From positions 310,001 to 374,000 of IMG/VR virus record IMGVR_UViG_3300027996_002186: a DNA stretch of 64,000 nt; one strand, 5' to 3'. Positions 4,287 to 61,561 of this stretch are shown one piece after another. The position numbers and the translations under genes are program-made. The stretch's first letter is position 1. The number at the start of each line of letters is the position of its first letter. A model generated the notes under the pieces. It had not been told where the DNA came from, made no database searches, and saw only the letters and a list, made by a program, of their open reading frames with translations.

Positions 4287-4898
4287 ATGGGAAAAGAGAT
4301 GTTGAAAAATAAAGAGCTTAGGATGATGGGGTTAGTGCCTTACAACCTATCAGATATACAAAAAGGTATTCAATTTGGACACGCTGTTGTTGAGTATAGT
4401 CAAATGATTAAAAAATCCAATAAAATTACTCATATAAATAGATATGAAGATTGGGCAGATAACTGGAAAACATTTATAATATTGAATGGTGGTACATCAA
4501 ATCATTCGGTTAATAGGTATCAACCAAATGAGGAATTTATCGGGTCTATGGAAACAAATCTAGAGACTCTAAAAAAGGCCGGAATACCAGTTGGTGTTTT
4601 TTATGAACCAGATCTAAATGATATGTTATCGGGTATTGTTTTCGTAGTTCAAGAAGAAGTTTTTAATAAAAAGGATTATCCTGATTTTGAAGATTGGGTT
4701 ATTGAAAATTATGGTGGTTTATTAAAAGTAGATACTGATAATCAATCATATGCTGAATCATCTAAACAACTATCGATGATGATTAAATATTCAGAGGATG
4801 AACATGATCAAAAAATCTATAATAAATGGGTTGATTTCGTTGGTGGTAGTAGTAACGCATTTATGAAAGAATTTTTAATAAATTTTAGTTTAGCATAA
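4287..4898 (+). CDS. Peptidyl-tRNA hydrolase 2 (Pth2)-like protein
   Basis: QFGHAVVE, FIILNGG and FYEPDLNDMLSGIVF motifs as in phage Pth2-like proteins. Confidence 0.6.
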   Translation: MGKEMLKNKELRMMGLVPYNLSDIQKGIQFGHAVVEYSQMIKKSNKITHINRYEDWADNWKTFIILNGGTSNHSVNRYQPNEEFIGSMETNLETLKKAGIPVGVFYEPDLNDMLSGIVFVVQEEVFNKKDYPDFEDWVIENYGGLLKVDTDNQSYAESSKQLSMMIKYSEDEHDQKIYNKWVDFVGGSSNAFMKEFLINFSLA

Positions 4899-5320
4899 TG
4901 TCTATACCAGTATTAAAACAAAATAATAAACCACAAAGTAAATGGTTTAAAATAAAGGATGATACATTTTATTCTGAATCTATTTCCTGTCAGTTATCAA
5001 TAGGTTCTCATAGTGATATTGATATATCACTGGATTTAAATAAATATACGAATTATAGAAAATACTTTTATGATTTATTTGATAAGATGTATAATGCTAA
5101 TACTGGTCAACACGGATATAAGAAAGATTATATCTTTGATATAATAACCGCACATTGGAGAGGCATTGGATGTAGTATAAAAAGTATGGATATAAATACG
5201 AATGGTTTGCTAAACTTAGATATACGTTGTGACTATATAGATATGGAGAATATACAAGAAAGAAGAGAAAATATACTCAATGATATTTTAAATGAAACTT
5301 CTGATAAGAAAAATATATAA
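4898..5320 (+). CDS. Tail-tube-fold-like small protein with C-terminal RxxI/K tag
   Basis: KKDYIFD..HWRGIGCSIKSMD..LDIRCDY resembles tube proteins; ends RENILNDIL. Confidence 0.4.
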   Translation: MSIPVLKQNNKPQSKWFKIKDDTFYSESISCQLSIGSHSDIDISLDLNKYTNYRKYFYDLFDKMYNANTGQHGYKKDYIFDIITAHWRGIGCSIKSMDINTNGLLNLDIRCDYIDMENIQERRENILNDILNETSDKKNI

Positions 5321-5338
5321 ATTAAAATAACAAATAAT

Positions 5339-7453
5339 ATGGAAGAAAATAAAGAGAAAGAATATTTGGATAAAGTTGAAGAAGTGAAAGCTTCAATTGA
5401 TGATGGTGGTGATGAGGATAGATACATTTCTTCTAAGAAACCAGACCCGAAATCTAAAACTCCGGTATTAGATACTTATAGTCGTGATCTAACTAAGATG
5501 GCAGAAGATGGTAAGCTTGATCCAATTGTTGGAAGAGAAAAGGAAATCGAAAGAGTTTCTCAAATTCTTTCAAGAAGAAAGAAAAATAATCCGATTCTAA
5601 TCGGTGAACCAGGGGTTGGTAAATCTACTATCGCAGAGGGATTAGCACTTAGAATAGTTCAAAGAAAAGTTAGTAGAATTCTTTTTAATAAAAGAATTGT
5701 AATGCTTGATTTAGCTTCTATGGTAGCTGGTACTAAGTATAGAGGACAGTTTGAAGAAAGAATCAAAGCTCTTATGTCAGAACTTGAAAAAGATCCTGAT
5801 ATTGTTCTTTTCATTGATGAAATTCATACTATTATCGGTGCTGGTGGTGCATCAGGTTCACTTGACGCATCCAATATGTTCAAACCAGCATTAGCTCGTG
5901 GTGAAATACAAATCATTGGAGCAACTACACTTGATGAGTACAGAAAGCATATCGAAAAAGATGGGGCACTTGAAAGAAGATTTCAAAAGGTAGTTGTTGA
6001 GCCAGCAACACCAGAAGAGTCAATTCAAATTTTAAGTAACATACTTGATAGATATGAAGACCATCATAATGTTACTTATACACCAGATGCTATTAAGGCT
6101 TGTGTTGAATTAACAACAAGATATATGAATGATAGATTCTTACCAGATAAGGCTATTGATGCTCTTGATGAATCTGGGGCTAGAGTACATATCGCTAATA
6201 TAATTGTTCCAAAGGAAATAACTTCCATTGAGAAAAAGATTGTCGATATTAAAGAAATGAAGAACGATGTTATACGTTCTCAGAAATATGAAGAAGCGGC
6301 TAAACTAAGAGATGTTGAAAGACAACTTAATGAATCTTTGGATATAGCAAGACAAGCTTGGGAGGATGATTCAAAAAACAATAGACAAACTGTAACTGAT
6401 GAAAATGTTGCTGAAGTTATTTCGATGATGACTGGTGTACCTGTTAGTAAGGTAAACGAGAAAGAGAATACAAAACTTGGAAAGATGAAAGATGTAGTAT
6501 CATCTAAAGTTATTGGACAAGATGAGGCTGTTAAAAAGATTGTGAAAGCTATTCAGAGAGGTCGTGTTGGACTTAAAGACCCGAATAAACCAATTGGTTC
6601 ATTTATGTTCTTGGGACCTACTGGTGTTGGTAAAACACAATTAGCCAAAGAATTGACCAAGTATCTTTTCGACTCAGAAGAGTCTTTAATTAGAATTGAT
6701 ATGTCAGAGTATATGGAGAAATTCGCAGTGTCTAGATTGATTGGAGCACCTCCGGGATATGTTGGTCACGATGAGGGTGGACAATTAACTGAAAAAGTTA
6801 GAAGAAAACCTTATTCTGTAATCTTACTTGATGAGATTGAAAAAGCTCACCCAGAAGTATTTAACTTACTACTTCAAGTATTAGATGATGGTCAATTAAC
6901 TGATTCACTTGGAAGAAAGGTGAACTTCAAGAATACGATTATTATTATGACATCAAATACTGGTTCTCGTCAATTAAAAGATTTTGGTAATGGTGTTGGA
7001 TTTTCAACAAAAGCAAAACAATCGTCTAAAGGTGAACACTCCAATGCGGTTATTGATAAAGAGTTGAAGAAAAAATTCGCACCCGAATTCTTAAATCGTG
7101 TTGATGATATCATTATGTTTAACTCTTTAGATAGAGAAGATATTAATGAGATAATCAAGATTGAAGTTGCTAAAGTTGTTGAAAGAGTTGAGCAAATGGA
7201 ATTCACACTTGACTTTACAGACGAGTCTATCAATTATATAGCTGGTGAAGGATTTGATCCTCAATATGGGGCTAGACCTTTGAAAAGAGCAATTCAAAGA
7301 CACGTTGAAGATGTTCTAACAGAAGAAATCATTGAATCTAATCCACCTAAAGGATCTAAGTTAACACTTGATTATGATAGTGAAAATGAGAAAATGATTG
7401 TTCTTACTAAGAAGAAAAGAGCTACTCGTAAGAAAAAAGAGGGTGATGAATAA
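5339..7453 (+). CDS. clpC: ClpC-type Hsp100 AAA+ ATPase lacking the N-terminal Clp_N domain
   Basis: Two Walker A motifs (GEPGVGKS, GPTGVGKT), FIDEIH, UVR motif KYEEAAKLRD, GVGF ClpP-docking loop, GARPLKR. Confidence 0.9.
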   Translation: MEENKEKEYLDKVEEVKASIDDGGDEDRYISSKKPDPKSKTPVLDTYSRDLTKMAEDGKLDPIVGREKEIERVSQILSRRKKNNPILIGEPGVGKSTIAEGLALRIVQRKVSRILFNKRIVMLDLASMVAGTKYRGQFEERIKALMSELEKDPDIVLFIDEIHTIIGAGGASGSLDASNMFKPALARGEIQIIGATTLDEYRKHIEKDGALERRFQKVVVEPATPEESIQILSNILDRYEDHHNVTYTPDAIKACVELTTRYMNDRFLPDKAIDALDESGARVHIANIIVPKEITSIEKKIVDIKEMKNDVIRSQKYEEAAKLRDVERQLNESLDIARQAWEDDSKNNRQTVTDENVAEVISMMTGVPVSKVNEKENTKLGKMKDVVSSKVIGQDEAVKKIVKAIQRGRVGLKDPNKPIGSFMFLGPTGVGKTQLAKELTKYLFDSEESLIRIDMSEYMEKFAVSRLIGAPPGYVGHDEGGQLTEKVRRKPYSVILLDEIEKAHPEVFNLLLQVLDDGQLTDSLGRKVNFKNTIIIMTSNTGSRQLKDFGNGVGFSTKAKQSSKGEHSNAVIDKELKKKFAPEFLNRVDDIIMFNSLDREDINEIIKIEVAKVVERVEQMEFTLDFTDESINYIAGEGFDPQYGARPLKRAIQRHVEDVLTEEIIESNPPKGSKLTLDYDSENEKMIVLTKKKRATRKKKEGDE

Positions 7454-7474
7454 TTAAAAAAACATCAAAAAATT

Positions 7475-8184: not shown

Positions 8185-8862
8185 ATGAAAATAGGATTAT
8201 TAATAATAGCAACAAATAAATACTCGCAATTTTTACAACCACTAATTGAAAGTGCTGATAGGTTTTTTCTTAAAGACCAGGATGTAACATACTTTGTTTT
8301 TACTAATGAAGATATACAGATTAATACTAATAGGAAAGTAGTTAGAATTAATGTTGAGCATAAAGAGTGGCCCTGGATGACACTAGGTCGATATGAAATA
8401 TTCTCAAATAATTCAAACGAATTATCAAAAATGGATTATCTATATTATTGTGATGCAGATATGAGATTTGTTGATTTCGTTGGTGATGAAATTTTAAGCG
8501 AAAGAGTAGCTACACAACATTGTGGTTATTATGAAGTTAGAGGAACACCCGAAACGAATACAAATTCACTCGCATATGTTGCTCCGAATGAGGAAATGCA
8601 ATATTTAGCAGGTGGATTTAATGGTGGTACATCAGAAGAATATCTAAAAATGTCAAAAGTATTATCTGATAGAACTAATAATGATTTTGAAAAAGGTATT
8701 ATTGCTGTTTGGCACGATGAAAGTCATATGAATAGATATTTCATAGATAATAAACCAACACTTATACTAGACCCTAGTTATTGTTATCATGAGGGTAGTA
8801 ATAGACCATTTAAGCAAAGATTAGTAGCTTTATCAAAAAATCATTCAGAACTAAGAAAATAA
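8185..8862 (+). CDS. GT6 glycosyltransferase (ABO-transferase family)
   Basis: IATNKY, DADM, AGGFNGG, WHDESHMNRY. Confidence 0.9.
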   Translation: MKIGLLIIATNKYSQFLQPLIESADRFFLKDQDVTYFVFTNEDIQINTNRKVVRINVEHKEWPWMTLGRYEIFSNNSNELSKMDYLYYCDADMRFVDFVGDEILSERVATQHCGYYEVRGTPETNTNSLAYVAPNEEMQYLAGGFNGGTSEEYLKMSKVLSDRTNNDFEKGIIAVWHDESHMNRYFIDNKPTLILDPSYCYHEGSNRPFKQRLVALSKNHSELRK

Positions 8863-8877
8863 AAATAAAAATAAATT

Positions 8878-9399
8878 ATGCCTTCAAAAACAGAAAATTT
8901 TAGTAAATATCCAAACGGTATCTTTATAGAAACTGGTAGTTTCATGGGAGATGGAATACAACAAGCTCTAAACGCTGGTTTTAGTAAAATAATATCAATT
9001 GAGTTATCCGATAAATATTTCGAGATATCAAAAAATAGATTCTCTAATAATCCAAATGTTGAAATTGTAAAGGGTGATTCTTTCAAAGTATTACCCGATG
9101 TGTTAAAAGACATAGATGAGCCAGTTACATTTTGGTTAGATGGACATCATTCTTGTGGAGATACAGCTTTAGGTGACCACTGGGCACCTCTAATGCAAGA
9201 GTTGGATGTTATAAAAGAACACAAAATAAAAACACATACTATCTTAATAGATGATATGAGATGTTGGGAACTTCCAAATCCAGTACACGGTTTTTATAAA
9301 GATGATATTTTCAAAAAATTATCAGAATTAAACCCAGATTACCAATTGACATATGAAGATGGTCTTCAAGAAAATGATATTTTAGTAGCACATCCATGA
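8878..9399 (+). CDS. Class I SAM-dependent methyltransferase-like protein
   Basis: FIETGSFMGDG, SIELS, GDS, FWLDGH, ILIDDMR. Confidence 0.65.
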   Translation: MPSKTENFSKYPNGIFIETGSFMGDGIQQALNAGFSKIISIELSDKYFEISKNRFSNNPNVEIVKGDSFKVLPDVLKDIDEPVTFWLDGHHSCGDTALGDHWAPLMQELDVIKEHKIKTHTILIDDMRCWELPNPVHGFYKDDIFKKLSELNPDYQLTYEDGLQENDILVAHP

Positions 9400-10046
9400 T
9401 ATCAATCCTATTAGCAACATATAACGGTGAGAAATATCTATCTCTATCCATTGAGTCTATTTTAAACCAGACATATCAAGATTTTGAGTTATTAATTGGG
9501 TTTAATGGCACTACTGATGATTCTAAGAGTATACCTGATAAATATAATGATCCTAGAATAAGGGTTTTTGATTATGGTGATGATAAAGGAAAATCTAAAA
9601 CTCTAAATAAACTCTTAAAGGAGGCTAAATATGATTGGATTGCTTTACAAGATGATGATGATTTTTGGATTCACACAAAGTTAGAAAAACAAATAAAATT
9701 AGTTAATGATTATGATGTCATTGGTACTTTCATAAATTATATTAATGAAAATGGTGATATAACTGGTAGACCAATCTTATCAAGCTTCCCAAATGATATA
9801 AAACACATATCATTAGCTGGTATTAACCAAGTAGCCAACACAAGTGCTATTTTTAAGAAATCAGATGCTTTATTGATGAATGGTTGGAAAGATGGACTTG
9901 ATGGTATAGAGGATTATGATTTTTGGTTAAGACTTATGAGAGAGGGTAAAAGTTTTATAAATATACCCGAAGAATTAGTTCATCATAGATTACATTCGAA
10001 TAGTAATTTTAATACAAAAAGACACGATTTAAGAAAAATATTATAA
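9396..10046 (+). CDS. GT2 glycosyltransferase
   Basis: ISILLATYNGEKY, LQDDDD, EDYDFWLR. Confidence 0.9.
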   Translation: MISILLATYNGEKYLSLSIESILNQTYQDFELLIGFNGTTDDSKSIPDKYNDPRIRVFDYGDDKGKSKTLNKLLKEAKYDWIALQDDDDFWIHTKLEKQIKLVNDYDVIGTFINYINENGDITGRPILSSFPNDIKHISLAGINQVANTSAIFKKSDALLMNGWKDGLDGIEDYDFWLRLMREGKSFINIPEELVHHRLHSNSNFNTKRHDLRKIL

Positions 10047-10050
10047 ATAT

Positions 10051-10689
10051 ATGTTAATAAGCTTTAATGAAATAGTAGGTAAATATGGTAAACCCAATGG
10101 TATTATACACCTTGGTGCACACTTAGCAGAAGAGATGGTTGATTATGTTAACCAAGGAATAAAAAATGTTGTATGGGTCGAAGCAAATCCGAGTTTATAT
10201 GAAAATTTAAAAGATATAATAAAAGATACTAACCATATTGCGATATCTGAGTTATTGTCTGATGTTGATGGGGATGTTATGAAGTTCAACATAGCTAAGA
10301 ACCACTACAATGGTAATTACCAATCATCATCGGTATTGGAATTTGGAACACACGCAACTAACCACCCACATATTGTTATGGAGGGTAGTGTTAATCTAAC
10401 ATCTAAAACACTAAACACCATATTTGAAGAAAGGGAATTGGATTATTCAAATTATGATTTTGTGAATTTAGATTTACAAGGATATGAACTTCCTGTTATA
10501 AAGGGATTCGGGGATAATATTTCAAAAATGAAATATATCTATACCGAAGTAAACACCGGGGAGGTTTATATGAATTGTACTAAGTTGAGTGAGTTAGATG
10601 AATACCTTGGTGGTTATGGGTTCAAAAGAGTTGAAATTAAAATGACCGAAGCTGAATGGGGTGATGCTCTGTATATAAAAATAATATAA
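10051..10689 (+). CDS. FkbM-family methyltransferase
   Basis: IHLGAH, VEANP, NLDLQGYEL, YTEVN, WGDALY. Confidence 0.85.
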   Translation: MLISFNEIVGKYGKPNGIIHLGAHLAEEMVDYVNQGIKNVVWVEANPSLYENLKDIIKDTNHIAISELLSDVDGDVMKFNIAKNHYNGNYQSSSVLEFGTHATNHPHIVMEGSVNLTSKTLNTIFEERELDYSNYDFVNLDLQGYELPVIKGFGDNISKMKYIYTEVNTGEVYMNCTKLSELDEYLGGYGFKRVEIKMTEAEWGDALYIKII

Positions 10690-10691
10690 TT

Positions 10692-11204
10692 ATGCCTAGA
10701 ATAGAAAAATTTAAAAACAAAACATCTAATTTTATAGAAACCGGATCTTATTTAGGTGATGGTATTCAATTAGCAATCGATAGTGGATTTGATAATATAT
10801 ATTCAATAGAATTATCAGATGAATATTATAATCATTGCTCTATAAGGTTTAGTGGTAATGATAAAGTAAAATTAATAAAAGGTGATTCTTATTATGAGCT
10901 TGATAATTTAATAAACGAATCAAATGAAATATTTACTTATTGGTTAGATGGGCATTATAGTGGAGGTAATACTGGATTTGGAATTTTGGAATTCCCAATA
11001 ATGAATGAATTGGAATCTATATTGAAAAGGGGAGTTAGTGGGGAAATTATTTATATTGATGATATGAGAATTTTAAGAGATTATTCAGACTCAATTAATG
11101 AGAATAAAATTATTGAGTTAATAAATAAATATAAAATTGACTATATAATTTCATATGAGAAATCAATTCATGATGAAAAAGATATAATAGTAATTGAATA
11201 TTAA
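10692..11204 (+). CDS. Methyltransferase-like protein, paralog of 8878..9399
   Basis: FIETGSYLGDG, SIELS, YWLDGH, YIDDMR. Confidence 0.65.
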   Translation: MPRIEKFKNKTSNFIETGSYLGDGIQLAIDSGFDNIYSIELSDEYYNHCSIRFSGNDKVKLIKGDSYYELDNLINESNEIFTYWLDGHYSGGNTGFGILEFPIMNELESILKRGVSGEIIYIDDMRILRDYSDSINENKIIELINKYKIDYIISYEKSIHDEKDIIVIEY

Positions 11205-11218
11205 AAAAAAATAATTAT

Positions 11219-12070
11219 ATGAATTTTTACTTTGAAGGATATTGGCATCATAAAAATCTTAATGGTTTAAAATTGATGATCAATGAGGGTATGTGTGTTG
11301 ATTTTACTTTTAATTCTAATAAAGAATATGATTGGATAGTTAATCTTAGTGAACTTAAAGTATATGATAATCACAATGGTGGTGTTATATATGGGCCGCA
11401 AATTCTATTTCATGTAATAGACATTAATTCTGTACCAAACTTAGATGGAAGAACATATTGTAATCTTTTATCTAAATGGAATAAAAAATTATGTAATGAT
11501 ATACATAATAGTAAAATAAAATGTCTTGCTCTACCATTCGGGGTGGATGTTAATAGATTTATACCGGGTGAAAAAACAGGCAAACCAGTTATTTATTTCA
11601 AACATGTTGATATCAAAAGACTTAGTGATGTTATAGAACACCTTGGTAACGATTTTATCATTTTTGACTATCAAAAGAAATATCAGGAACAATCATTTAA
11701 TGAAGCTATCTCAAAGGCTCCTTATGCTATTTGGGTAGGTAGGCACGAAAGTCAAGGATTTGCTTTTCAAGAAACATTAAGTTGTAACACACCTATATTT
11801 GTAATTGATATAAAATCTCTACGGGATGAGGTTGTTCCTAATGTTAAGACTGTGTGGGTTGATTATCTACCTGGTCATGATTTATCTGGTACAGCCGCTT
11901 CTTATTTTGATGATACTTGTGGGTTAATATCCTATCCAGAAAATTGGAAAGAAGATTTTAAATCATTTATGGATAATTTAGATAATTACTCTCCGAGAGA
12001 GTTTATAGTAAAAAACTTATCACCAAAAGCATGTTATGACCTTTGGATAAAAACATTATCAAGTCTATGA
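11219..12070 (+). CDS. GT-B fold glycosyltransferase-like protein
   Basis: HESQGFAFQETLSCNTPIFV resembles the EX7E nucleotide-binding motif; sits in the glycan island. Confidence 0.55.
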   Translation: MNFYFEGYWHHKNLNGLKLMINEGMCVDFTFNSNKEYDWIVNLSELKVYDNHNGGVIYGPQILFHVIDINSVPNLDGRTYCNLLSKWNKKLCNDIHNSKIKCLALPFGVDVNRFIPGEKTGKPVIYFKHVDIKRLSDVIEHLGNDFIIFDYQKKYQEQSFNEAISKAPYAIWVGRHESQGFAFQETLSCNTPIFVIDIKSLRDEVVPNVKTVWVDYLPGHDLSGTAASYFDDTCGLISYPENWKEDFKSFMDNLDNYSPREFIVKNLSPKACYDLWIKTLSSL

Positions 12071-12699
12071 ATCTAGTTATAATAACATCTGTTATAAACA
12101 TATCTAAAGATCCATTAGATTATAGTAGGGTGAGATCTGTTTATACACCAGAAGAAAGGTATACACAAGTAATAAAAACAATAGAAAGTATTAATGGTAA
12201 AATAGAAAACTCTGACATTCTATTTTTAGAATCTTCTGAAATTGATATAGAAAAGGAAAATACTATAAAGGATATGGTTGATCATTATGTTAAATTAACA
12301 GATGATAAAATTAAAAAGGTGATAGATGGACAATTCAAAGCGTCTGCTGAATCAACACAAATACTAGAGGGTCTTAAAAGGATTGATATTAATAAATATC
12401 ATAATATTTATAAAATATCTGGTAGATACTCTCTTAATGATAATTTTGATTATATGAAATATGATAATGATCATAACATATTTTTTGAAACATCTGATGG
12501 GTTAAAGATAGCTACTGTTTTTTATAAGATAAATAAAAAATATATTGATACTTTCATAAGCACATTAGAATATTGCTCAAATAGTAAAAATATGTTAGAG
12601 ATGGAATTTAAGAATTCTTTTGTAGATGAGTATAAAAAAATAGAAGTTCTTGGGGTAGAAGGTAATGTTAGTGTCGATGGTAATTATATAAATTGGTAA
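12067..12699 (+). CDS. Hypothetical glycan-island protein (possible GT)
   Basis: Likely start MNLVIITSVIN at 12067; KISGRY motif; operon context. Confidence 0.45.
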   Translation: MNLVIITSVINISKDPLDYSRVRSVYTPEERYTQVIKTIESINGKIENSDILFLESSEIDIEKENTIKDMVDHYVKLTDDKIKKVIDGQFKASAESTQILEGLKRIDINKYHNIYKISGRYSLNDNFDYMKYDNDHNIFFETSDGLKIATVFYKINKKYIDTFISTLEYCSNSKNMLEMEFKNSFVDEYKKIEVLGVEGNVSVDGNYINW

Positions 12700-12700
12700 T

Positions 12701-13372: not shown

Positions 13373-13379
13373 ATAAGAT

Positions 13380-14330: not shown

Positions 14331-14345
14331 AAATAATAAAATTAA

Positions 14346-16432: not shown

Positions 16433-16433
16433 T

Positions 16434-20523: not shown

Positions 20524-20544
20524 AAAATATTACGATAACTTATT

Positions 20545-22493: not shown

Positions 22494-22502
22494 TAAAAAA
22501 GA

Positions 22503-24198: not shown

Positions 24199-24200
24199 TT

Positions 24201-25572: not shown

Positions 25573-25759
25573 AATTAATAGTACTGAGATACAAGATATA
25601 GGTTCTGCTTATGGTATGGATGTAGAAGATGAATTAACTTCGATGTTATCGGAAGAGATAGCTAAATCAATTGATAGAGAAATATTTAAAAGTATGGGTA
25701 TAGAACTAGATAGATTTAAACGAAGAAAAACATCAATTAATAAGATATTTTCCTCTTAA
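25562..25759 (+). CDS. Mini-protein consisting of a major-capsid (gp23-like) helix fragment plus C-terminal tag
   Basis: QDIGSAYGMDVEDELTSMLSEEIAKSIDREI matches T4 gp23 QDLRAVHGMDADAELSGILATEIMLEINREV (recalled); ends RKTSINKIF. Confidence 0.65.
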   Translation: MKSKINSTEIQDIGSAYGMDVEDELTSMLSEEIAKSIDREIFKSMGIELDRFKRRKTSINKIFSS

Positions 25760-35606: not shown

Positions 35607-35908
35607 TGTTTAGTACTAAAGATATAAACCAAAATTATATTCTTGTTTACTTAAATTACAGGAAGCTTCCAAATATGGATCATAAAGAAGATTCGATGTC
35701 TTCTGGTTCAGACGTTCTTACATTAGATGATTTTAATATGGTTGAGGGTAGAATGTATAATGACGAACAGACTGTTAATATACAACCAATTACTGGTAAA
35801 TTCATACCCTTTACATTAACCGAAACCTATTATAAGGATGTTGTTTTACATATAGCATTATTTGAAAGAGATAGGAAAATAGATAATATAATAAAAAAAG
35901 AGACTTAA
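35606..35908 (+). CDS. Hypothetical protein with C-terminal tag
   Basis: Ends RDRKIDNII. Confidence 0.55.
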   Translation: MFSTKDINQNYILVYLNYRKLPNMDHKEDSMSSGSDVLTLDDFNMVEGRMYNDEQTVNIQPITGKFIPFTLTETYYKDVVLHIALFERDRKIDNIIKKET

Positions 35909-38413: not shown

Positions 38414-38516
38414 TTAAATAATTTATTTATGTGTATTATATATTAATTATATCTAATTGTTTAGACTTTATTGGGGTTTTTATCTATATTTGTAGGAGAA
38501 TAATTAAAAAAGTTTT

Positions 38517-39092
38517 ATGGGAAATGAAAAGAAAGATAAGAGAGCGAGATGGTCTCAATACCCCAATAGGTTAAATGATGCCTTAATTAGTAATGTTCAT
38601 GCAAATCAATTAGATAATCTAAAATTTAACGTTTCTTCACTAAGATCTGATTTATTCAATGATAAATTAAAAAGAAAGCTATTATCATTATCAATATCAA
38701 ATGGATCAAAAGATTGTGCTTTATTCTTAATAGAACAAGGATCTATTTGTAATCCCTATCTCATACCATCAGAGTGTAGATATGATAAGATAGATGTTGT
38801 ATGTGATATCTTGGAAGAGTTGATGAACGAATACCCACAAAGTTTCACACCAGTAGATTTTGGAACAAATATAAACTTCATGGGTAAGAAAGTGTTAATT
38901 AAGAGGATACTAGACCCTTCTAAGGTAGTTGATAATCCCGGAAGAGTTGATTATTTAATGAAAAATACACATTTTTTTGATACTAAAGATATAAAGGAAG
39001 TAATAAACGAAGAATTTAAAAGTAATCCTGAAAAATGGAGTTCTCTTATATCATTATTAAGAGATATTAAATTAAAAGAATTAGGAATATGA
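38517..39092 (+). CDS. Hypothetical protein with C-terminal tag
   Basis: TATATTTG at 38485-38492; ends RDIKLKELGI. Confidence 0.6.
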   Translation: MGNEKKDKRARWSQYPNRLNDALISNVHANQLDNLKFNVSSLRSDLFNDKLKRKLLSLSISNGSKDCALFLIEQGSICNPYLIPSECRYDKIDVVCDILEELMNEYPQSFTPVDFGTNINFMGKKVLIKRILDPSKVVDNPGRVDYLMKNTHFFDTKDIKEVINEEFKSNPEKWSSLISLLRDIKLKELGI

Positions 39093-41130: not shown

Positions 41131-41131
41131 T

Positions 41132-42627: not shown

Positions 42628-42703
42628 TCAATACCCAATTCGGTTAACTTATTATCACGTTTAATGCAATAGATTCTAATTCCTTAATATCTTTAAATTT
42701 CAT
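42624..42703 (-). pseudogene. Frameshifted mini-ORF with C-terminal tag
   Basis: MKFKDIKELESIAL in one frame and KRDNKLTELGID* in the -1 frame; one base missing in TTAAA. Confidence 0.35.
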
Positions 42704-42712
42704 TCGGTATTC

Positions 42713-42898
42713 TTATCCATTAAATACTTTATTAATTTTATTTTTCCTATTACTTTGTTTAATATCGGTCCAAATATCTGAACGAAAAGTTAATGATTTC
42801 CACTCACCACTTTGAAAAATATAGTTATTTGATTCAATCGTGTTATAATAAATATCTCCTTCTATTGGATTCTCTGGTACTGTTGATAATACCAACAT
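42713..42898 (-). CDS. Mini-protein with fibre-like repeat and C-terminal tag
   Basis: PENPIEGDIYYNT..YIFQSGEW; ends RKNKINKVF. Confidence 0.5.
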   Translation of the reverse strand: MLVLSTVPENPIEGDIYYNTIESNNYIFQSGEWKSLTFRSDIWTDIKQSNRKNKINKVFNG

Positions 42899-43989: not shown

Positions 43990-43992
43990 AAC

Positions 43993-44355
43993 TTATGCTA
44001 ATATCTTTGTTAGTTTAATATCTCTATATATTTGTTTGGTGCTATCCGTTAGTCTTATTTCTGTGTATTTACTATATTGTATAATAAATTGATCAACTCC
44101 GTTCTCTTTACTTATCCTATAATTCATAACAGGCATTTCCTCAATTATTTCCGCAAATACTGTTTCTATTTGAGATATTTTCAATTCTCCACTCACAACA
44201 TCAGTTAATCTATTACAAAAATAATCCATTAGTGGTGTTGCTGTTTCCACAACTTTTTTTAGAAATTTTTCACTATTATATCCACGGTTGACGCCAATTG
44301 GAATTCTACTTATCCCTAATCCTGGATTGGATATAACATACCAATCTACTATCAT
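43993..44355 (-). CDS. Hypothetical protein with C-terminal tag
   Basis: Ends RDIKLTKIL. Confidence 0.55.
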   Translation of the reverse strand: MIVDWYVISNPGLGISRIPIGVNRGYNSEKFLKKVVETATPLMDYFCNRLTDVVSGELKISQIETVFAEIIEEMPVMNYRISKENGVDQFIIQYSKYTEIRLTDSTKQIYRDIKLTKILA

Positions 44356-44909
44356 TTTGTTAAAAAATTTAATTTCTTTTCTCTTCTAATTCTTATTATT
44401 TCACCTTCTATATCATACGATTCTAAAACGTTATTAACTAATTTAGCAACGTAGTTATCAACTATTAATGATATGTTTTCAGCGGTTCTATCAAGATATT
44501 TCAATTTATCTAATATTCCCTTTGATGATATCAACATTTCAACTAAATACTCATTGAATTCATCAATATCAAACATAATTTGAAATAATTCTAATCTCTT
44601 ACCATCGTCATGTTCACCTTGGAATATAGGAGGAGGCTTCAAAAATATTTTATGTAAAACTTTAGCAACTGCTGGTAAAACTAAATCAAGTGTATCATCT
44701 TCTCCTTCATAGAAACTACCCTCTAAATCTTCTCTATCGAAAATACTAGTATCATCAATAACTTGGTTTAGTATCTTAATAAATTCAGGTTTTAGTTTTT
44801 CATCAACTCTATTTGATAACTCACCAACTATATACTGTCTGTACTTTATATTAGACTTGATATCAAATAATGTAACTTTAACTTTATCCTTTCTTGTTTG
44901 GTTTGACAT
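44352..44909 (-). CDS. Hypothetical protein with C-terminal tag
   Basis: Ends RREKKLNFL. Confidence 0.55.
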   Translation of the reverse strand: MSNQTRKDKVKVTLFDIKSNIKYRQYIVGELSNRVDEKLKPEFIKILNQVIDDTSIFDREDLEGSFYEGEDDTLDLVLPAVAKVLHKIFLKPPPIFQGEHDDGKRLELFQIMFDIDEFNEYLVEMLISSKGILDKLKYLDRTAENISLIVDNYVAKLVNNVLESYDIEGEIIRIRREKKLNFLTK

Positions 44910-45412: not shown

Positions 45413-45413
45413 C

Positions 45414-46495: not shown

Positions 46496-46562
46496 TAATT
46501 ATTGTTTATTTTGTAATAAATTCCTTATATTTGTTTATTATTAAACCACTAAAGAAAAAGAT

Positions 46563-46976
46563 ATGATTACAGACAGCAAAATTGACAAAGTACAGAATAG
46601 AATCAAAGCAGCAATAGCTAAAATTGAGAAAGAAGAAAATGTGAAAATATCTTTCGGTAATATTAGATATAATAGTGCATACTATACCTCACAACTAAAA
46701 GTATCAACCACAGAAAAGAGTAACAAAGTTACTAATGTATATGAGGGTATCTGTAAGAGATTAGGATTTACTCAGAACATAATTGGTATGAAATTCATGT
46801 CTGGTAAAATTTTAATGGAAATTGTTGATATAAAAACCAGAAATAGAAAATATCCTATCTTAACTACTGGTAGTAATGGTAAAAGCTATAAACACACAGT
46901 TGGTCAAGTTAAAACATTAATCGGCGGTGATAAAATCATCAATAGAAATGCTAATTTAGATAAAATACTAAGTTAG
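46563..46976 (+). CDS. Hypothetical protein with C-terminal tag
   Basis: TATATTTG at 46526-46533; ends RNANLDKIL. Confidence 0.6.
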   Translation: MITDSKIDKVQNRIKAAIAKIEKEENVKISFGNIRYNSAYYTSQLKVSTTEKSNKVTNVYEGICKRLGFTQNIIGMKFMSGKILMEIVDIKTRNRKYPILTTGSNGKSYKHTVGQVKTLIGGDKIINRNANLDKILS

Positions 46977-58299: not shown

Positions 58300-58533
58300 T
58301 TAAATACCTAATGATTTTATTTTCATATGTCTTTTAACTTTTAAGTAATCATCCTTATCCATTGATAATGTTATTTTCTTGTCTCTGTAATAAGTTACAC
58401 CTTTACAAACCCAATCAATTTTCACATAATCAATAAAAACACTACTTGTGTATTCAGTTGCTTTTAATATTTTTATCTTATCAAAAAAGCTTATATCGAT
58501 CTCATATATTTCCCCATATATTCTAACTGTCAT
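58300..58533 (-). CDS. Small protein with C-terminal tag
   Basis: Ends RHMKIKSLGI. Confidence 0.55.
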   Translation of the reverse strand: MTVRIYGEIYEIDISFFDKIKILKATEYTSSVFIDYVKIDWVCKGVTYYRDKKITLSMDKDDYLKVKRHMKIKSLGI

Positions 58534-59011
58534 CTCCTAATATTGAACTTAGTTTATTATCCCTAACTTCATATTTCTCAGTTATATCAGCATATCGAAT
58601 AACATAAAAACTACTCATTTTAGATAAATCGGCGAATTTTGAAATGGTGTAGATTGCGAATTTTTTCCACTTACCCTCTTCAAAGAACTTATGCAAATCT
58701 GATTCGGTTTTGAATGTATAGGCACGTGTCTCATATGTTCTTGTTATGATTTTATTACCTTCCAATTTCATTATGTTAAAAACGGGTGATTTACAAACAT
58801 ATGATATCTTATCCCAATACTTATCAAGTAAATCATCTAACCATAAAGAAGTATTGAATGTTGCTAAATTCACATTAACATTAGAACTATCATTACAAAC
58901 CTCACAATTTTCAACTAAATATTTAAGAGCTTCTAAATTATACTCAGATATTGGATATACTGATAATTCTCTTTTTGGATTCACACTTTTAATAAAATCA
59001 CCAAACATCAT
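58523..59011 (-). CDS. Hypothetical protein with C-terminal tag
   Basis: Ends RDNKLSSILG. Confidence 0.55.
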   Translation of the reverse strand: MMFGDFIKSVNPKRELSVYPISEYNLEALKYLVENCEVCNDSSNVNVNLATFNTSLWLDDLLDKYWDKISYVCKSPVFNIMKLEGNKIITRTYETRAYTFKTESDLHKFFEEGKWKKFAIYTISKFADLSKMSSFYVIRYADITEKYEVRDNKLSSILGDDS

Positions 59012-59420
59012 ATTTTTTTATTTCTATTCCAGCTTCCTTTAGGAAATCCAAACCGGATGTATCTTTATATTCTATAACATAAACCAATCTTTTTATACCA
59101 GATTGTAAAATCAATTTAGAACAATCTTTACAAGGTGAATGTGTTTGATATAAAGTAGCACCATCACATGAATGTCCATGTCTAGCACATTTCAGAATGG
59201 CGTTTGCTTCTCCGTGTATAACACTCCAACTTGTAGTACCATCATCTATTTCACAAGCGTTATCGAACCCTGTGGGTGTACCATTATAACCATCTGATAT
59301 AATCATACCATTCTTTACAATAAGAGCACCTACTTGTTTACGTGTACAATGAGAGAGATTGGACCACTCTTTAGCCATCTCTAAATATGTTTTATCATAT
59401 CTTTCTTGCTTAGTATCCAT
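58998..59420 (-). CDS. dCMP deaminase
   Basis: HCTRKQVGA, GYNG, HGEAN, PCKDC. Confidence 0.92.
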   Translation of the reverse strand: MDTKQERYDKTYLEMAKEWSNLSHCTRKQVGALIVKNGMIISDGYNGTPTGFDNACEIDDGTTSWSVIHGEANAILKCARHGHSCDGATLYQTHSPCKDCSKLILQSGIKRLVYVIEYKDTSGLDFLKEAGIEIKKYDVW

Positions 59421-59571
59421 TACTTCGATTTTTATTAAATATTCTTTTAATTTTCTCTTTTCTAACTTCTCTGGATAAGTTTAATATATTCTTAATAGCC
59501 CAATCAGTACTGATATATTGATTACCAGTTATCATAAGCTCTTTCATTAATTCCCACTTAAAGTTATTCAT
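59410..59571 (-). CDS. Mini-protein with C-terminal tag (start reassigned to MNNFKW)
   Basis: Ends RKEKIKRIF..; FKWELMKELMITGNQY weakly resembles a portal helix. Confidence 0.5.
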   Translation of the reverse strand: MNNFKWELMKELMITGNQYISTDWAIKNILNLSREVRKEKIKRIFNKNRSNGY

Positions 59572-59737
59572 TGAATATATTTTTAATTTTATACATCCTC
59601 TCAGATCTTTTATCAAGCCCATTAATCATGTCACTAACAACCTGACTAGTAACTATGTAATTACCAACTCCTCTTCTCGAATATTTGTTTATTTTAGAAG
59701 CAGTTTTTAATATTTTATCAAATAAATTTTTAGACAA
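59564..59737 (-). CDS. Mini-protein: major-capsid (gp23-like) fragment + C-terminal tag (TTG start; not in track)
   Basis: Manual translation LSKNLFDKILKTASKINKYSRRGVGNYIVTSQVVSDMINGLDKRSERMYKIKNIFNE*; matches T4 gp23 LLFQIDKEAVEIARQTGRGEGNFIIASRNVVNVL (recalled). Confidence 0.65.
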   Translation of the reverse strand: MSKNLFDKILKTASKINKYSRRGVGNYIVTSQVVSDMINGLDKRSERMYKIKNIFNE

Positions 59738-59743
59738 TGATAT

Positions 59744-60283
59744 TTATTTCTTTTTGTCTATTTGCATTATATTAAGATCCATAGGTGTTTTTCTACCAAA
59801 AATAGCAACGGATACTGTAATCCTATCACCATTAATAGCTTCAATGGTACCAATCATTGTATCAAATGGGCCATCTGTTATTGAGACATCCTCACCAACA
59901 ATAAACATATCACTAATATCCATTTCTTTTTGTTCTTCTTGTTGACCTATCATTCTTTTTATCTCTTTTTCTTTCATAGGATTTATACTACCATCTCTTT
60001 CTGTTAAAAATCCGGTTGCTCCGTCACAACCACTTAGAAAGTATTTCAACTCACCAATAGAATTGGCTTCAACAAAAATATAACCAGGAAACATTATTTT
60101 ATCTCTGACAACTTTTTTACCATTTTTAAGATTCACAACAGTTTCCATTGGCACAAGTACTTGACTAACAGCCTTTTGTAATTCCGGTTCTTTTTGTATT
60201 CTCTCACAAACTTTTCTTTCTTTATTACCCTGTGTTCTGATAATATACCAATTCATTGTTTTTTCTTTTGTTCTAGTTCTCAT
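59744..60283 (-). CDS. nusG: Transcription elongation factor NusG
   Basis: NGN domain WYIIRT..E.KV, FPGYIFVE; KOW GE.V.I.DGPF, IFGRKTP. Confidence 0.9.
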   Translation of the reverse strand: MRTRTKEKTMNWYIIRTQGNKERKVCERIQKEPELQKAVSQVLVPMETVVNLKNGKKVVRDKIMFPGYIFVEANSIGELKYFLSGCDGATGFLTERDGSINPMKEKEIKRMIGQQEEQKEMDISDMFIVGEDVSITDGPFDTMIGTIEAINGDRITVSVAIFGRKTPMDLNIMQIDKKK

Positions 60284-60600
60284 AATATTTGTATTAATTT
60301 ATTTATCTTAAAGTCTCTTAATTTCTCTTTAGCTTCACTATTTTTTGATAACCATTTCTGGAATTCTTCATTACTTGTAACTTCTTCTATTTTAGAAACC
60401 TTATTAAGTTCAATATATTTTATTAAAATTGAATCTTTTTTATTCTCATCTGATTTTTGATATATTTCAAAATCTACACTATCAAACTCAACCATACAAA
60501 AATAAAACTTATCACCCTTTAAATAATTAAAGAAAACTAGGTTATCAAACCTTCCCATTTCCTCTTCCTTAAATAATATTATTTTATCCGATCTTATCAA
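60280..60600 (-). CDS. Hypothetical protein with C-terminal tag
   Basis: Ends RDFKINKLI. Confidence 0.55.
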   Translation of the reverse strand: MIRSDKIILFKEEEMGRFDNLVFFNYLKGDKFYFCMVEFDSVDFEIYQKSDENKKDSILIKYIELNKVSKIEEVTSNEEFQKWLSKNSEAKEKLRDFKINKLIQIL

Positions 60601-60976
60601 GAGCTTTATAATATTTTAATTCCTCTTTAATAAAATCAAAATGGTTTTCAATTAAATAGTGTAGGTCTAAATCCTTAATCTTTAATTTCATTAAAAGTAG
60701 TTTGAAGTCTTTGTTTGGTATAACTGGCTTCTCTTTTTTACTTTTAGACCAAAACCAATTAGGGTATGATTTATTTAACATAAAATAATACCATAAGTCC
60801 ATAGAGGATACTTTATCTATACTTTTTGAGTTAAGAAGTTGTGATTTATCTGGAAACTTTTTAGAAAAATACCGATTGAATATAAAGAAGTTTTTATCCT
60901 TTTCATCATCCGTAATATTAACCCAATCACTTTTATTTCTAAACATTGCGTTAGCAACATCAACTAATTCTGCCAT
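60584..60976 (-). CDS. Possible T4 gp62-like clamp-loader small subunit
   Basis: FIFNRYFS..QLLN..W.K pattern; replication-gene neighbourhood. Confidence 0.4.
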   Translation of the reverse strand: MAELVDVANAMFRNKSDWVNITDDEKDKNFFIFNRYFSKKFPDKSQLLNSKSIDKVSSMDLWYYFMLNKSYPNWFWSKSKKEKPVIPNKDFKLLLMKLKIKDLDLHYLIENHFDFIKEELKYYKALDKIG

Positions 60977-60977
60977 A

Positions 60978-61175
60978 TTACTTGTATATTATTACAACCT
61001 CTTTGTTTGTTTTCAATTTAGTATCATTTATACATTTAATAGCTAAATCAAAAGTATCAAATACACCATAACCAGCATCACTACCATTCATCGGTTTTTC
61101 ATAATCATACCAACATTTTTCAGTAACCCAATATTTATCTTGTTTATCCTTTAATAATTCTAAAAATAGTTTCAT
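60978..61175 (-). CDS. Small hypothetical protein
   Basis: 65-aa ORF in operon. Confidence 0.45.
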   Translation of the reverse strand: MKLFLELLKDKQDKYWVTEKCWYDYEKPMNGSDAGYGVFDTFDLAIKCINDTKLKTNKEVVIIYK

Positions 61176-61561
61176 AATATTTTATTTAATGAGTGTTCTC
61201 TCCACTTCTGTTTATCTAATTCTCTAATAAAATCAACACCAAATAAATCTACTAATTCTTCTGTTGTTGGTTCCCTTTTGAATTTGTTTTTCTCTGTTAT
61301 AATAAATCCATTTTCCAATTCATATTCAATCTCTCCGCTTATTGGATTATACAAGGTCCTTTTAATTTCACTCTTTTTAGATTTTTTTAATTTTGTTAAA
61401 AGATGATTTATCTTTTCTGGTAAATCATCTTTATCAGGATTACTAACACAATAATCTTCACAAAAAAAACTAATTATCTCTGCTAAATTTTTGTTGACAA
61501 TTCCTAAACCCTGCGTTATAGGAATCCATTTGTCAAGTATTTCACTTTTTGTATTTATCAT
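61172..61561 (-). CDS. Protein with MCP-N-terminus-like segment and C-terminal tag
   Basis: ILDKWIPITQGLGI resembles the L.EKW.P.L start of gp23-type capsid proteins; ends REHSLNKIL. Confidence 0.5.
   Translation of the reverse strand: MINTKSEILDKWIPITQGLGIVNKNLAEIISFFCEDYCVSNPDKDDLPEKINHLLTKLKKSKKSEIKRTLYNPISGEIEYELENGFIITEKNKFKREPTTEELVDLFGVDFIRELDKQKWREHSLNKIL

What the first reader, a model, noticed from the sequence alone, without database searches (positions are those of the whole stretch)
4898..61561. Shared C-terminal tag R-x-x-K-[IL]-x-x-[ILV]-[LFIG] on about 15 otherwise unrelated small proteins
Seen tails: RENILNDIL (4898), RKTSINKIF (25562), RDRKIDNII (35606), RDIKLKELGI (38517), RDFIMYDLF (39089, variant), RKNKINKVF (42713), RDIKLTKIL (43993), REKKLNFL (44352), RNANLDKIL (46563), RHMKIKSLGI (58300), RDNKLSSILG (58523), RKEKIKRIF (59410), RMYKIKNIF (59564), RDFKINKLI (60280) and REHSLNKIL (61172). 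None of these has the N-terminal leader, and none of the leader proteins has this tail. Inference: this amphipathic helix is an address code that docks diverse cargo onto one receptor, such as a phage scaffold, membrane, sliding clamp or the N-domain-less ClpC as a degron. It is the strongest candidate here for an undescribed protein-level system.
Basis: partly seen in the sequence, partly recalled or inferred. Interest (0 to 1): 0.85.

Follow-up and report, generated by a model that had tools for sequence, protein, structure and literature searches.

The report
Shared C-terminal tag on early megaphage proteins
In this giant phage and its relatives, about one protein in six, nearly all small early-expressed proteins of unknown function with unrelated bodies, ends in the same 10-13 residue arginine-anchored helix. 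This looks like an undescribed docking tag read by one unidentified partner.

Summary
All 15 tails exist. In the window, 15 proteins carry the loose motif in their last 21 residues, against 0.6 expected. In the closest complete genome (LR745206, 635 kb), 172 of 921 ORFs carry it (9.4 expected), and 108 match the strict form (about 1 expected).

Consensus: [ST]-K-[SQ]-E-[ILY]-R-[DEN]-x-K-[IL]-[NKD]-x-[ILV]-[LGIF], usually 0-2 residues before the stop.

- Selection acts on the protein. Codons follow genome usage, Arg is not replaced by Lys, and the tail is the best-conserved block in two families.
- AlphaFold2 models it as a low-confidence, undocked helix.
- The bodies are unrelated, small, fast-evolving ORFans.
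- Tail genes sit in units headed by Bacteroidota-type TAnnTTTG promoters (91 versus 26). Virion genes and the N-terminal-leader proteins use a phage-specific TTTAATATATA motif.
- LR756502, LR756504 and many IMG/VR contigs carry variants. LR756501 lacks it.

Best reading: a docking helix for one receptor that marks early proteins, most likely coupling them to AAA+ proteolysis. The receptor is unidentified. Membrane anchoring, capsid loading, a DNA-level signal and reinitiation are disfavoured.

The parts
5264..5290 (+). Tail RENILNDIL (+9 residues) of the 140-aa ORF 4898-5320, immediately upstream of the ClpC-like gene
   Evidence: the orthologue in LR745206 keeps RENIINDIL
25724..25750 (+). 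Tail RKTSINKIF of the 68-aa ORF 25553-25759, whose body matches a segment of Gp23 major capsid protein
   Evidence: RRKNSINKIF is kept in LR745206 and in several IMG/VR relatives
35867..35893 (+). Tail RDRKIDNII of the 100-aa ORF 35606-35908
   Evidence: the orthologue has RNDKINKII
39060..39089 (+). Tail RDIKLKELGI* of the 191-aa ORF 38517-39092 (ankyrin-like by language-model features)
38485..38492 (+). TATATTTG box (Bacteroidota -7 type) 25 nt before the ATG of tail gene 38517
   Evidence: consensus from PMC6847099
39440..39466 (+). Variant tail RDFIMYDLF of the 128-aa ORF 39089-39475
   Evidence: the orthologue has RDLIINDLF
42722..42748 (-). Tail RKNKINKVF of the 61-aa ORF 42713-42898, last gene of the GrpE-DnaJ operon
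43999..44025 (-). Tail RDIKLTKIL of the 120-aa ORF 43993-44355
   Evidence: TKQIYRDIKLxKIL is the most conserved block in 19 homologues; AF2 gives helix 105-119 with pLDDT about 38 against a body of about 80
44361..44384 (-). Tail variant REKKLNFL (one residue shorter) of the 185-aa ORF 44352-44909
   Evidence: the orthologue ends RDIKIKSITSD
46944..46970 (+). Tail RNANLDKIL of the 137-aa ORF 46563-46976 (Y4mA_C family, PF27402)
   Evidence: INRNANLDKL is nearly invariant in 120 homologues; AF2 gives tail helix 122-136, with pLDDT below 50 over residues 127-137, against a body of 70-87
46526..46533 (+). TATATTTG box 30 nt before the ATG of tail gene 46563
58303..58332 (-). Tail RHMKIKSLGI* of the 77-aa ORF 58300-58533
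   Evidence: the orthologue has RHLKIKSLGI
58535..58564 (-). Tail RDNKLSSILG of the 162-aa ORF 58523-59011
59437..59463 (-). Tail RKEKIKRIF (+8 residues) of the 70-aa ORF 59410-59622
59573..59599 (-). Tail RMYKIKNIF of a short ORF (59 codons stop to stop, about 59564-59743) between NusG and ORF 59410-59622
   Evidence: the LR745206 51-aa orthologue ends RKYKIKNIFGG
60292..60318 (-). Tail RDFKINKLI of ORF 60280-60600
61175..61201 (-). Tail REHSLNKIL* of the 129-aa ORF 61172-61561
5339..7453 (+). ClpC-type AAA+ unfoldase without a Clp_N domain; candidate receptor only (inferred, not shown)
   Evidence: Pfam AAA, AAA_lid_9, UVR, AAA_2 and ClpB_D2-small, with no Clp_N; VGF tripeptide at residues 553-555; TTTAATATATA-type motif at -27

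Best explanation
The tail is a protein-level short linear motif: a 10-13 residue amphipathic helix. It has an S/T-x-x-E N-cap, an invariant Arg at the head of an I/L-I/L-L stripe, and often a Gly C-cap. It hangs free from the C-terminus of many unrelated, small, fast-evolving proteins that the phage makes from host-type (early) promoters.

Shown:
- The motif exists, and it is enriched at the C-terminus.
- Selection acts at the amino-acid level.
- The carrier bodies are unrelated.
- It is associated with the TAnnTTTG promoter class and excluded from the class that holds virion genes.
- It has lineage-specific variants.

Inferred:
- The helix docks into a groove of one common receptor, with Arg making a specific salt bridge.

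My committed guess for the outcome is that docking couples these early proteins to an AAA+ protease, the phage's own N-domain-less ClpC with ClpP or a host protease. The tail would act either as an encoded degron that clears early effectors when the late programme starts, or as a tether that lets these binder proteins deliver their targets for destruction.
For: - Enrichment: 15 against 0.6 expected in the window; 172 against 9.4 (loose) and 108 against about 1 (strict) in LR745206.
- Arg-specific: with position 1 freed, there are 108 R and 4 K among 125 C-terminal matches, although K is 2.4 times commoner. Position 5 is I or L in 141 of 147.
- Amino-acid-level selection: codons at motif positions follow genome usage.
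- Conservation: tail identity is 72% against 50% for bodies in orthologues. The tail is the most conserved block in two families.
- AF2 gives helices with pLDDT below 50 beside bodies of 70-87 in both families.
- Bodies are unrelated (170 components of 172). 37 of the 40 longest have no Pfam family. Tail proteins evolve faster (median identity 65% against 78%, P=0.005).
- Early class: directly upstream, 25 E against 2 L. By operon, 91 E against 26 L, compared with 183 E against 339 L for other genes (P=2.5e-17). 39% of class-E ORFs of 200 aa or fewer carry the tail, against 11% of class-L ORFs.
- Class L holds portal, Gp23, TerL and a baseplate hub. Class E holds ThyA, FolD, DNA methylases and similar enzymes.
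- The TAnnTTTG identity of class E comes from PMC6847099.
- The phage encodes a ClpC-type unfoldase with a VGF loop but no Clp_N, and LR745206 encodes a ClpP.
- A near-terminal position (118 of 172 tails end 0-2 residues after position 9) suits a terminus-engaged protease or a tether.
Against: - No receptor was identified and no interaction was modelled or measured.
- ClpC/ClpA-like genes without an N-domain occur in many jumbo phages in which no such tag is known to me; their proteomes were not scanned here. The gene is therefore not specific to this system.
- LR756504 has such a gene. LR756501 could not be checked.
- 16 full-consensus copies lie inside longer ORFs, where a free end is not available. 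They may be gene fusions.
- A capped, sequence-specific helix is unlike the known bacterial C-terminal degrons.
- The early and late classes rest on promoter-like motifs and on which genes carry them, not on expression data.
- The association is weaker in the LR756502 sample (P=0.04) and could not be assessed in LR756504.
Confidence: 0.35

Rival explanations
1. It is a docking tag with a non-proteolytic outcome. The helix recruits early proteins to a common site or scaffold, such as the replisome, a viral factory or host RNA polymerase. Alternatively, tails pair with each other so that tail proteins co-assemble.
For: All the evidence for a free, conserved, Arg-specific helix applies equally. 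Internal copies are easier to accept for a docking helix than for a degron.
Against: No candidate site or scaffold was found. It is unclear why about 40% of small early ORFans, but none of the early enzymes, would need co-localisation.
Confidence: 0.25
2. It is a chaperone handle. The tail recruits the phage DnaK/DnaJ/GrpE system to marginally stable, newly evolved ORFan proteins.
For: Three tail genes are interleaved with GrpE and DnaJ in one operon (42713-45487), and the same order is kept in LR745206. The carriers are ORFans, not enzymes.
Against: LR756501 has a DnaK (63.5% identical) but no tails (1 of 121 ORFs). DnaK binds extended hydrophobic cores, not capped helices with alternating charges (established knowledge, recalled from memory). 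Strict Arg specificity would not be expected.
Confidence: 0.1
3. It is a capsid-loading peptide, analogous to encapsulin cargo-loading peptides or the T4 capsid targeting sequence but placed at the C-terminus. Tail proteins would be packed into the head and injected.
For: The carriers are small, as injected proteins need to be. The capsid is of T4 Gp23 type. One tail protein resembles a Gp23 segment.
Against: Tail genes are nearly excluded from the promoter class of portal, major capsid protein and terminase (2 of 27 direct; 26 L against 91 E). A separate N-terminal leader with a late-class promoter already fits the capsid-targeting role and is mutually exclusive with the tail.
Confidence: 0.07
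4. It is a membrane-targeting amphipathic helix of the MinD/FtsA kind.
For: It is C-terminal, about 10 residues long, amphipathic and often followed by Gly. The pattern K-I-K-S-h-h-G resembles MinD tails (recalled from memory).
Against: Mean net charge is +0.07 counting the carboxylate, and Asp or Glu is common at positions 2, 6 and 7. Lys cannot replace Arg. There are only 0.25 aromatic residues per core.
Confidence: 0.05
5. It is an inherited structural element. All carriers would descend from one ancestral small gene or share a 3' cassette spread by recombination, and the helix would simply be the slowest-evolving part, with no common partner.
For: LR756504 has small paralogue groups among its carriers (components of 5, 4, 2 and 2). 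Carriers cluster in arrays of small genes.
Against: 170 of 172 bodies show no similarity. Body types differ (ankyrin-like, Y4mA_C, Gp23 fragment). The helix is not packed in AF2 models, so a structural role in cis is unlikely. There is no nucleotide-level conservation that recombination would need or leave.
Confidence: 0.08
6. It is a nucleic-acid-level or translational signal (promoter, terminator, A-rich initiation region or termination-reinitiation element for the next gene) that merely translates into a peptide.
For: The tail codons are A/T-rich. Many tail genes overlap the next start (ATGA).
Against: Synonymous codons are used in genome proportions at every conserved position. Hydrophobic positions swap between ATA, ATT, TTA, CTT and TTG. 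Tight stop-start coupling is no commoner than in matched non-tail genes (56% against 52%, P=0.64). 44% of tail genes have no closely coupled downstream gene.
Confidence: 0.02

Closest known systems
Phage T4 capsid targeting sequence (N-terminal, about 10 aa, on internal proteins)
   Same: A short terminal peptide shared by otherwise unrelated phage proteins, which acts as an address.
   Different: The T4 sequence is N-terminal, ends in an L/I-x-E protease site and sits on late, packaged proteins. Here that description fits the separate MK[YH]LKxF..E leader class (late-type promoter). The tail is C-terminal, belongs to the early class and is mutually exclusive with the leader. T4 details are from memory.
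C-terminal degrons and adaptor tethers of bacterial AAA+ proteases (ssrA tag, MuA C-terminus, SspB ClpX-binding tail); NblA as a small phage-borne ClpC adaptor
   Same: Short C-terminal peptides, exposed and near the end of the chain, that connect diverse proteins to one unfoldase. The phage encodes a ClpC-type unfoldase with a ClpP-docking loop and, in LR745206, a ClpP.
   Different: There is no sequence resemblance. The known examples are not capped amphipathic helices, and none is written into more than 100 genes of one genome. Binding was not tested.
Poxvirus ankyrin/PRANC (F-box-like) and other viral adaptor families
   Same: Many variable binder domains, at least one ankyrin-like here, share one C-terminal module that plugs into a single hub. 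They sit in variable genome regions and are expressed early.
   Different: PRANC/F-box is a folded domain of about 40-50 aa in eukaryotic viruses that targets Skp1. Here the module is a helix of about 13 aa in a bacteriophage, and the hub is unknown.
Encapsulin cargo-loading peptides
   Same: C-terminal short peptides on unrelated cargo, some with an L-G-I-like pattern, that bind the inside of an HK97-fold shell.
   Different: Their consensus is Gly/Ser-rich and extended, and cargo is co-expressed with the shell. The tail genes avoid the promoter class of the capsid genes.
MinD/FtsA membrane-targeting sequence
   Same: C-terminal amphipathic helix of about 10 residues, sometimes ending in Gly.
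   Different: Those sequences are cationic, with Lys and Arg interchangeable. The tails are neutral and strictly need Arg.

Membership tests
T4-type capsid targeting sequence | N-terminal position with a prohead-protease site (L/I-x-E) at its end | tested here: not met
   The motif is C-terminal. N-terminal zone hits: 0 in the window and 5 (loose) or 0 (strict) in LR745206.
T4-type capsid targeting sequence | Carried by proteins made together with the head (late class) | tested here: not met
   Tail genes are 91 E against 26 L. Portal, Gp23 and TerL are in class L. This rests on promoter motifs, not on expression data.
MinD/FtsA membrane-targeting sequence | Net positive amphipathic helix in which Lys and Arg are interchangeable | tested here: not met
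   Mean net charge +0.07; R 108 against K 4 at position 1.
Sliding-clamp binding motifs (PIP box Q-x-x-[LIM]-x-x-[FY]-[FY]; bacterial QL[SD]LF) | Gln at position 1, hydrophobic at 4, aromatic pair at 7 and 8 | tested here: not met
   Logo: R1, K4, I/L5, I/L/V8, L/G/I/F9, with 0.25 aromatic residues per core. The clamp motif definitions are from memory.
C-terminal degron of an AAA+ protease | Exposed peptide at or very near the free C-terminus | tested here: met
   118 of 172 tails end 0-2 residues after position 9. AF2 pLDDT is below 50. However, 16 copies are internal.
C-terminal degron of an AAA+ protease | Shortens half-life in a protease-dependent way, or binds the unfoldase or an adaptor | not testable with these tools
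   Needs a stability or binding assay, or multimer modelling.
Encapsulin cargo-loading peptide | Co-expression with, and binding to, an HK97-fold shell protein | tested here: not met
   The promoter class is opposite to that of the Gp23 gene. Binding was not testable.
F-box/PRANC adaptor module | Folded three-helix domain of about 40-50 aa matching the Pfam F-box or PRANC models | tested here: not met
   No Pfam family matched on 20 window proteins, 16 of them tail carriers, or on 37 of 40 LR745206 carriers. The conserved block is only about 13 aa.
Protein kinase catalytic loop (look-alike YRDIKLENIL) | Embedded in a kinase fold, with catalytic Asn at +5 and a DFG motif downstream | tested here: not met
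   The only PDB profile hits are at chance level (E above 5). The tails end the protein and no kinase domain is found.
One paralogous gene family | Detectable similarity outside the shared motif | tested here: not met
   170 BLAST components among 172 bodies. No PHROG family matches the tails. Remote homology was not excluded for every pair.

The most novel reading that the evidence does not exclude
The tail proteins are a phage-encoded adaptor arsenal. More than 100 fast-evolving early binder domains per genome would each be plugged by the same C-terminal helix into one AAA+ protease (the phage's N-domain-less ClpC-ClpP or a host protease). The phage could then direct destruction of many host proteins, including defence proteins. 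This would be a bacterial-virus counterpart of the F-box/PRANC strategy of eukaryotic viruses.
Probability: 0.12. Interest if true: 0.95.

Novelty: new variant of a known kind. Interest (0 to 1): 0.8.

Why it matters
- Nearly all of these proteins have no known function. A shared tag gives a single experimental handle on 12-19% of a megaphage proteome: one peptide, one receptor to find.
- If the tag controls stability or delivery to a protease, it would be the first proteome-wide encoded fate signal in a phage. It would also explain how a 0.6-Mb phage manages a very large early effector set.
- It offers a portable tag for Bacteroidota, which are poor in genetic tools.
- It gives a sequence rule to pick out early effector candidates in metagenomic megaphage contigs.
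- The tail, the separate N-terminal leader and the two promoter motifs together sort much of the proteome into classes from sequence alone.

Tried and rejected
- Chance or K/I/L-rich composition: rejected by tail-only shuffles, reversed-motif and N-terminal controls.
- DNA- or RNA-level signal: rejected by codon usage at motif positions and by varied codons.
- Termination-reinitiation aid: no excess of tight stop-start coupling.
- Paralogy: all-against-all BLAST without tails.
- Known families: Pfam and PHROGs on carriers gave almost nothing. The one 'ClpP with tail' is the ordinary ClpP C-terminus and a chance match.
- PDB profile search: only chance hits, including the kinase catalytic loop.
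- Foldseek of one body: nothing significant.
- ClpC as a lineage-specific marker: it is widespread in jumbo phages, so co-occurrence is uninformative.
- Alternative C-terminal tag in LR756501: none seen by eye.
- Literature: four searches found no description of the motif.
- Metatranscriptome contigs: fragmentary, and they give no transcription start or timing information.
- Promoter-class replication in LR756504: failed because its promoter motifs differ and most genes stayed unassigned.

Full report
**What the window is.** The DNA is 29% G+C and densely coding. It is identical over a 644-aa gene to two IMG/VR contigs of 313 and 483 kb. Its closest complete relative is the 634,780-bp uncultured megaphage LR745206 (DnaK 88.8% identical, about 81% nucleotide identity in shared parts), followed by LR756502. 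These belong to the over-630-kb megaphage group described in PMC9723777. The core is T4-like: gp32-like SSB, Rnl1-like ligase and 5'-3' exonuclease in the window, and Gp23, Gp20 portal and T4-type terminase in LR745206. Two findings point to a Bacteroidota host: CHU_C type IX secretion domains and intergenic TAnnTTTG boxes, which match the Bacteroidetes -7 promoter element (PMC6847099).

**Checking the observation.** All 15 peptides are present, in frame, 0-9 residues before a stop.
- The strict motif occurs 8 times in 86 window proteins, always within 8 residues of the end.
- The loose motif occurs 19 times, 15 of them within 12 residues of the end.
- Shuffling only the last 25 residues of each protein predicts 0.6 carriers. 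The reversed motif and the N-terminal zone each give none.
- Two extra loose matches (genes 29413-30426 and 31606-32763) are not kept in orthologues and are chance.

**Scale.** I tiled the whole LR745206 genome and called 921 ORFs of at least 50 aa.
- 172 carry the loose motif in their last 21 residues (expected 9.4, maximum 21 in 300 shuffles).
- 108 carry the strict form (expected about 1).
- The reversed motif gives 11 and 1.
- Carriers occur all along the genome and are densest in small-gene arrays, for example 19 of 47 ORFs in the first 20 kb.

**Anatomy.** The logo is [ST](-4) K(-3) [SQ](-2) E(-1) [ILY](0) R(1) [DEN](2) x K(4) [IL](5) [NKD](6) x [ILV](8) [LGIF](9). 118 of 172 tails end 0-2 residues later.
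- S/T-x-x-E is a helix N-cap pattern, and Gly followed by a hydrophobic residue is a C-cap pattern. This is my reading of the logo.
- With position 1 left free, 108 of 125 C-terminal matches have Arg and only 4 have Lys, although Lys is 2.4 times commoner in the proteome.
- Position 5 is I or L in 141 of 147 matches.
- On a helical wheel, R1, L5, I8 and L9 fall on one face, flanked by K4 and D2 (inference).
- Mean net charge is about 0.

**Level of selection.** Codons at each conserved position are used in genome-wide proportions, with only a mild ATA excess at position 8. Hydrophobic positions use ATA, ATT, TTA, CTT, TTG and ATG. The constraint is therefore on amino acids.
- In window-LR745206 orthologue pairs, the tail is 72% identical against 50% for the bodies.
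- In the 43993-44355 family, TKQIYRDIKLxKIL is the most conserved block across 19 homologues, the most distant (P0136) about 38% identical by BLASTP.
- In the 46563-46976 family (Y4mA_C, 450 homologues), INRNANLDKL is nearly invariant, while the 0-4 residues after it vary.

**The carriers.**
- With tails removed, the 172 proteins form 170 BLAST components.
- Median length is 107 aa, against 148 for all ORFs.
- 37 of the 40 longest have no Pfam family. The 'ClpP' match is the normal ClpP C-terminus.
- Fourteen of the sixteen window tail carriers scanned have no Pfam family. The exceptions are the Gp23-like fragment and GrpE, whose RYPKIILG is a loose-motif match.
- One window carrier looks ankyrin-like to a protein language model.
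- Tail proteins diverge faster than their neighbours (median identity 65% against 78%, P=0.005) and are lost more often (9 of 14 retained against 55 of 71).

**Structure.** AlphaFold2 with family alignments models both tested bodies at pLDDT 70-87. Both tails come out as helices whose pLDDT falls below 50 (residues 127-137 of helix 122-136, and 107-120 of helix 105-119). High conservation combined with low placement confidence is what a partner-binding helix would give. Foldseek found no significant fold match for one body.

**Transcription class.** Two intergenic motifs dominate LR745206:
- TAnnTTTG, 192 intergenic copies, called class E here.
- TTTAATATATA, lying 5-40 nt before start codons, with 193 of 302 copies in the 7.6% of the genome that is intergenic, called class L here.

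| Gene group | Directly upstream | Inherited along same-strand runs |
|---|---|---|
| Tail genes | 25 E, 2 L | 91 E, 26 L |
| All non-tail genes (leader proteins included) | 62 E, 170 L | 183 E, 339 L |
| N-terminal-leader proteins | 0 E, 20 L | 2 E, 40 L |

The Fisher P for tail against non-tail genes is 2.5e-17. Large class-L genes include portal, Gp23, TerL and a baseplate hub. Large class-E genes are ThyA, FolD, EF-G, DNA methylases, PRPP synthetase and ligases. So 39% of class-E ORFs of 200 aa or fewer carry the tail, against 11% of class-L ORFs. The window agrees: E boxes lie before 38517 and 46563, and L motifs lie before leader operons, RNR and the ClpC-like gene. Calling E 'early' and L 'late or phage-specific' is an inference from promoter type and gene content. 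The LR756502 sample shows the same direction (P=0.04). LR756504 could not be classified.

**Distribution.**

| Genome sample | ORFs with tail | Typical form |
|---|---|---|
| LR756502 (100 kb) | 47 of 185 | often ...R[ND]xKLxx[IL]GI* |
| LR756504 (100 kb) | 35 of 210 | [LIV]xE[YH]RKxIIxxL[LI]* |
| LR756501 (100 kb) | 1 of 121 | no alternative tail visible, though the N-terminal leader is present |

An IMG/VR scan with one back-translated form returned 116 stretches. About 72 seeds lie 0-10 codons before a stop, and 33 loci hold three or more tails. One example has 22 of 40 ORFs in 15 kb, ending ...REEKLNQLGI*.

**Mechanism.** The data fit a free helix read in trans by one receptor, specific to early ORFan proteins. 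Several alternatives are disfavoured:
- Membrane anchoring: neutral charge and strict Arg requirement.
- Capsid loading: wrong promoter class, and the leader already fills that role.
- A nucleic-acid signal: codon usage.
- Reinitiation: 56% against 52% tight coupling.
- Simple common descent: unrelated bodies.

For the outcome I commit, with low confidence, to coupling with AAA+ proteolysis.
- The phage has a ClpC-type unfoldase with a UVR middle domain and a VGF ClpP-docking tripeptide but no Clp_N domain. LR745206 has a ClpP.
- The near-terminal position suits a degron or a tether.
- A fate signal restricted to early effectors and absent from early enzymes makes biological sense.

Against this reading:
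- Such ClpC/ClpA-like genes are common in jumbo phages.
- Sixteen full-consensus copies are internal.
- Nothing was tested for binding.

**Comparison with known systems.** In logic, the tail resembles terminal address peptides (T4 capsid targeting sequence, encapsulin cargo peptides), protease degrons and tethers (ssrA, SspB tail, NblA), and viral adaptor modules (PRANC/F-box). It meets the defining features of none of these where they could be tested. No Pfam, PHROG or PDB entry matches it. Four literature searches found no description.

**Limits.** Gene calls are my own greedy ORF calls. Promoter classes are motif-based. Related genomes other than LR745206 were only sampled. Details of T4, MinD, SspB, NblA, PRANC and encapsulin motifs are recalled from memory.

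Noticed in passing
window 3612-4019 (+), with 2706-2993, 2991-3063 and 4027-4099: A full-length GOLLD RNA (RF02032, 278 bits) lies in the ORF-free stretch. It is flanked by two 73-nt direct repeats (81% alike, tRNA-like in look, but ARAGORN calls no tRNA). It is preceded by three 71-nt repeats that each carry a TAnnTTTG box.
   Followed up: partly
window 1706, 2150, 34043-35353, 35924-37353, 41132-41548, 48129-49394, 49433-50116; LR745206 genome-wide: An N-terminal leader MK[YH]LKxF..E[S] sits on 53 LR745206 proteins. It is tied to the TTTAATATATA promoter class (40 L against 2 E) and is mutually exclusive with the tail. Carriers include a T4 Rnl1-like RNA ligase and a 2H/Acb1-like phosphoesterase fused to an exonuclease. 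It resembles the T4 capsid targeting sequence with an L-x-E protease site (from memory), which suggests packaged and injected enzymes. It is also present in LR756501.
   Followed up: partly
LR745206 intergenic regions; window e.g. 38485-38492 and 46526-46533: There are two promoter-like motif classes. The Bacteroidota-type TAnnTTTG heads metabolic and ORFan units. TTTAATATATA lies 5-40 nt before the ATG and heads virion genes, some aaRS genes, RNR and the ClpC-like gene.
   Followed up: yes
window 25553-25759 (+): A 68-aa ORF matches a 36-50 residue segment of T4 Gp23 major capsid protein (Pfam E=2.7e-7; PHROG 138) and ends in a tail. It is conserved with its tail in LR745206 and in several IMG/VR relatives.
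   Followed up: partly
window 42713-45899 and 50461-52341: A complete phage Hsp70 set is present: a GrpE, tail-185aa, tail-120aa, DnaJ, tail-61aa operon, plus a DnaK that ends ...FEEVD. The ClpC-like gene 5339-7453 lacks Clp_N but has a VGF loop. Similar N-domain-less ClpA/C genes occur in RaK2-, 121Q- and GAP32-like jumbo phages.
   Followed up: partly
LR745206, e.g. 120830-122440, 235077-236744, 571551-572561: Sixteen full-consensus motifs lie inside longer ORFs, each followed by an N/G/D-rich stretch and 15-330 more residues. One ORF has two copies. These are probably fusions of neighbouring small genes.
   Followed up: no
window 36800-42700: Marine metatranscriptome assemblies hold identical or near-identical pieces of this stretch (RNR gene, ORFs 39642-39950 and 41602-42381, and parts of tail genes from a relative). 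The phage group therefore occurs in marine samples. Transcription itself is not proven.
   Followed up: partly
window 62523-64000: About 1.5 kb has no long ORF and contains short dispersed direct repeats and a TATATATA palindrome next to the exonuclease gene. It is unexplained.
   Followed up: no
window 8185-25572: A 17-kb same-strand block of about 20 tightly packed genes has no tail, no leader and no promoter motif inside it. I did not scan these genes against any family library.
   Followed up: no
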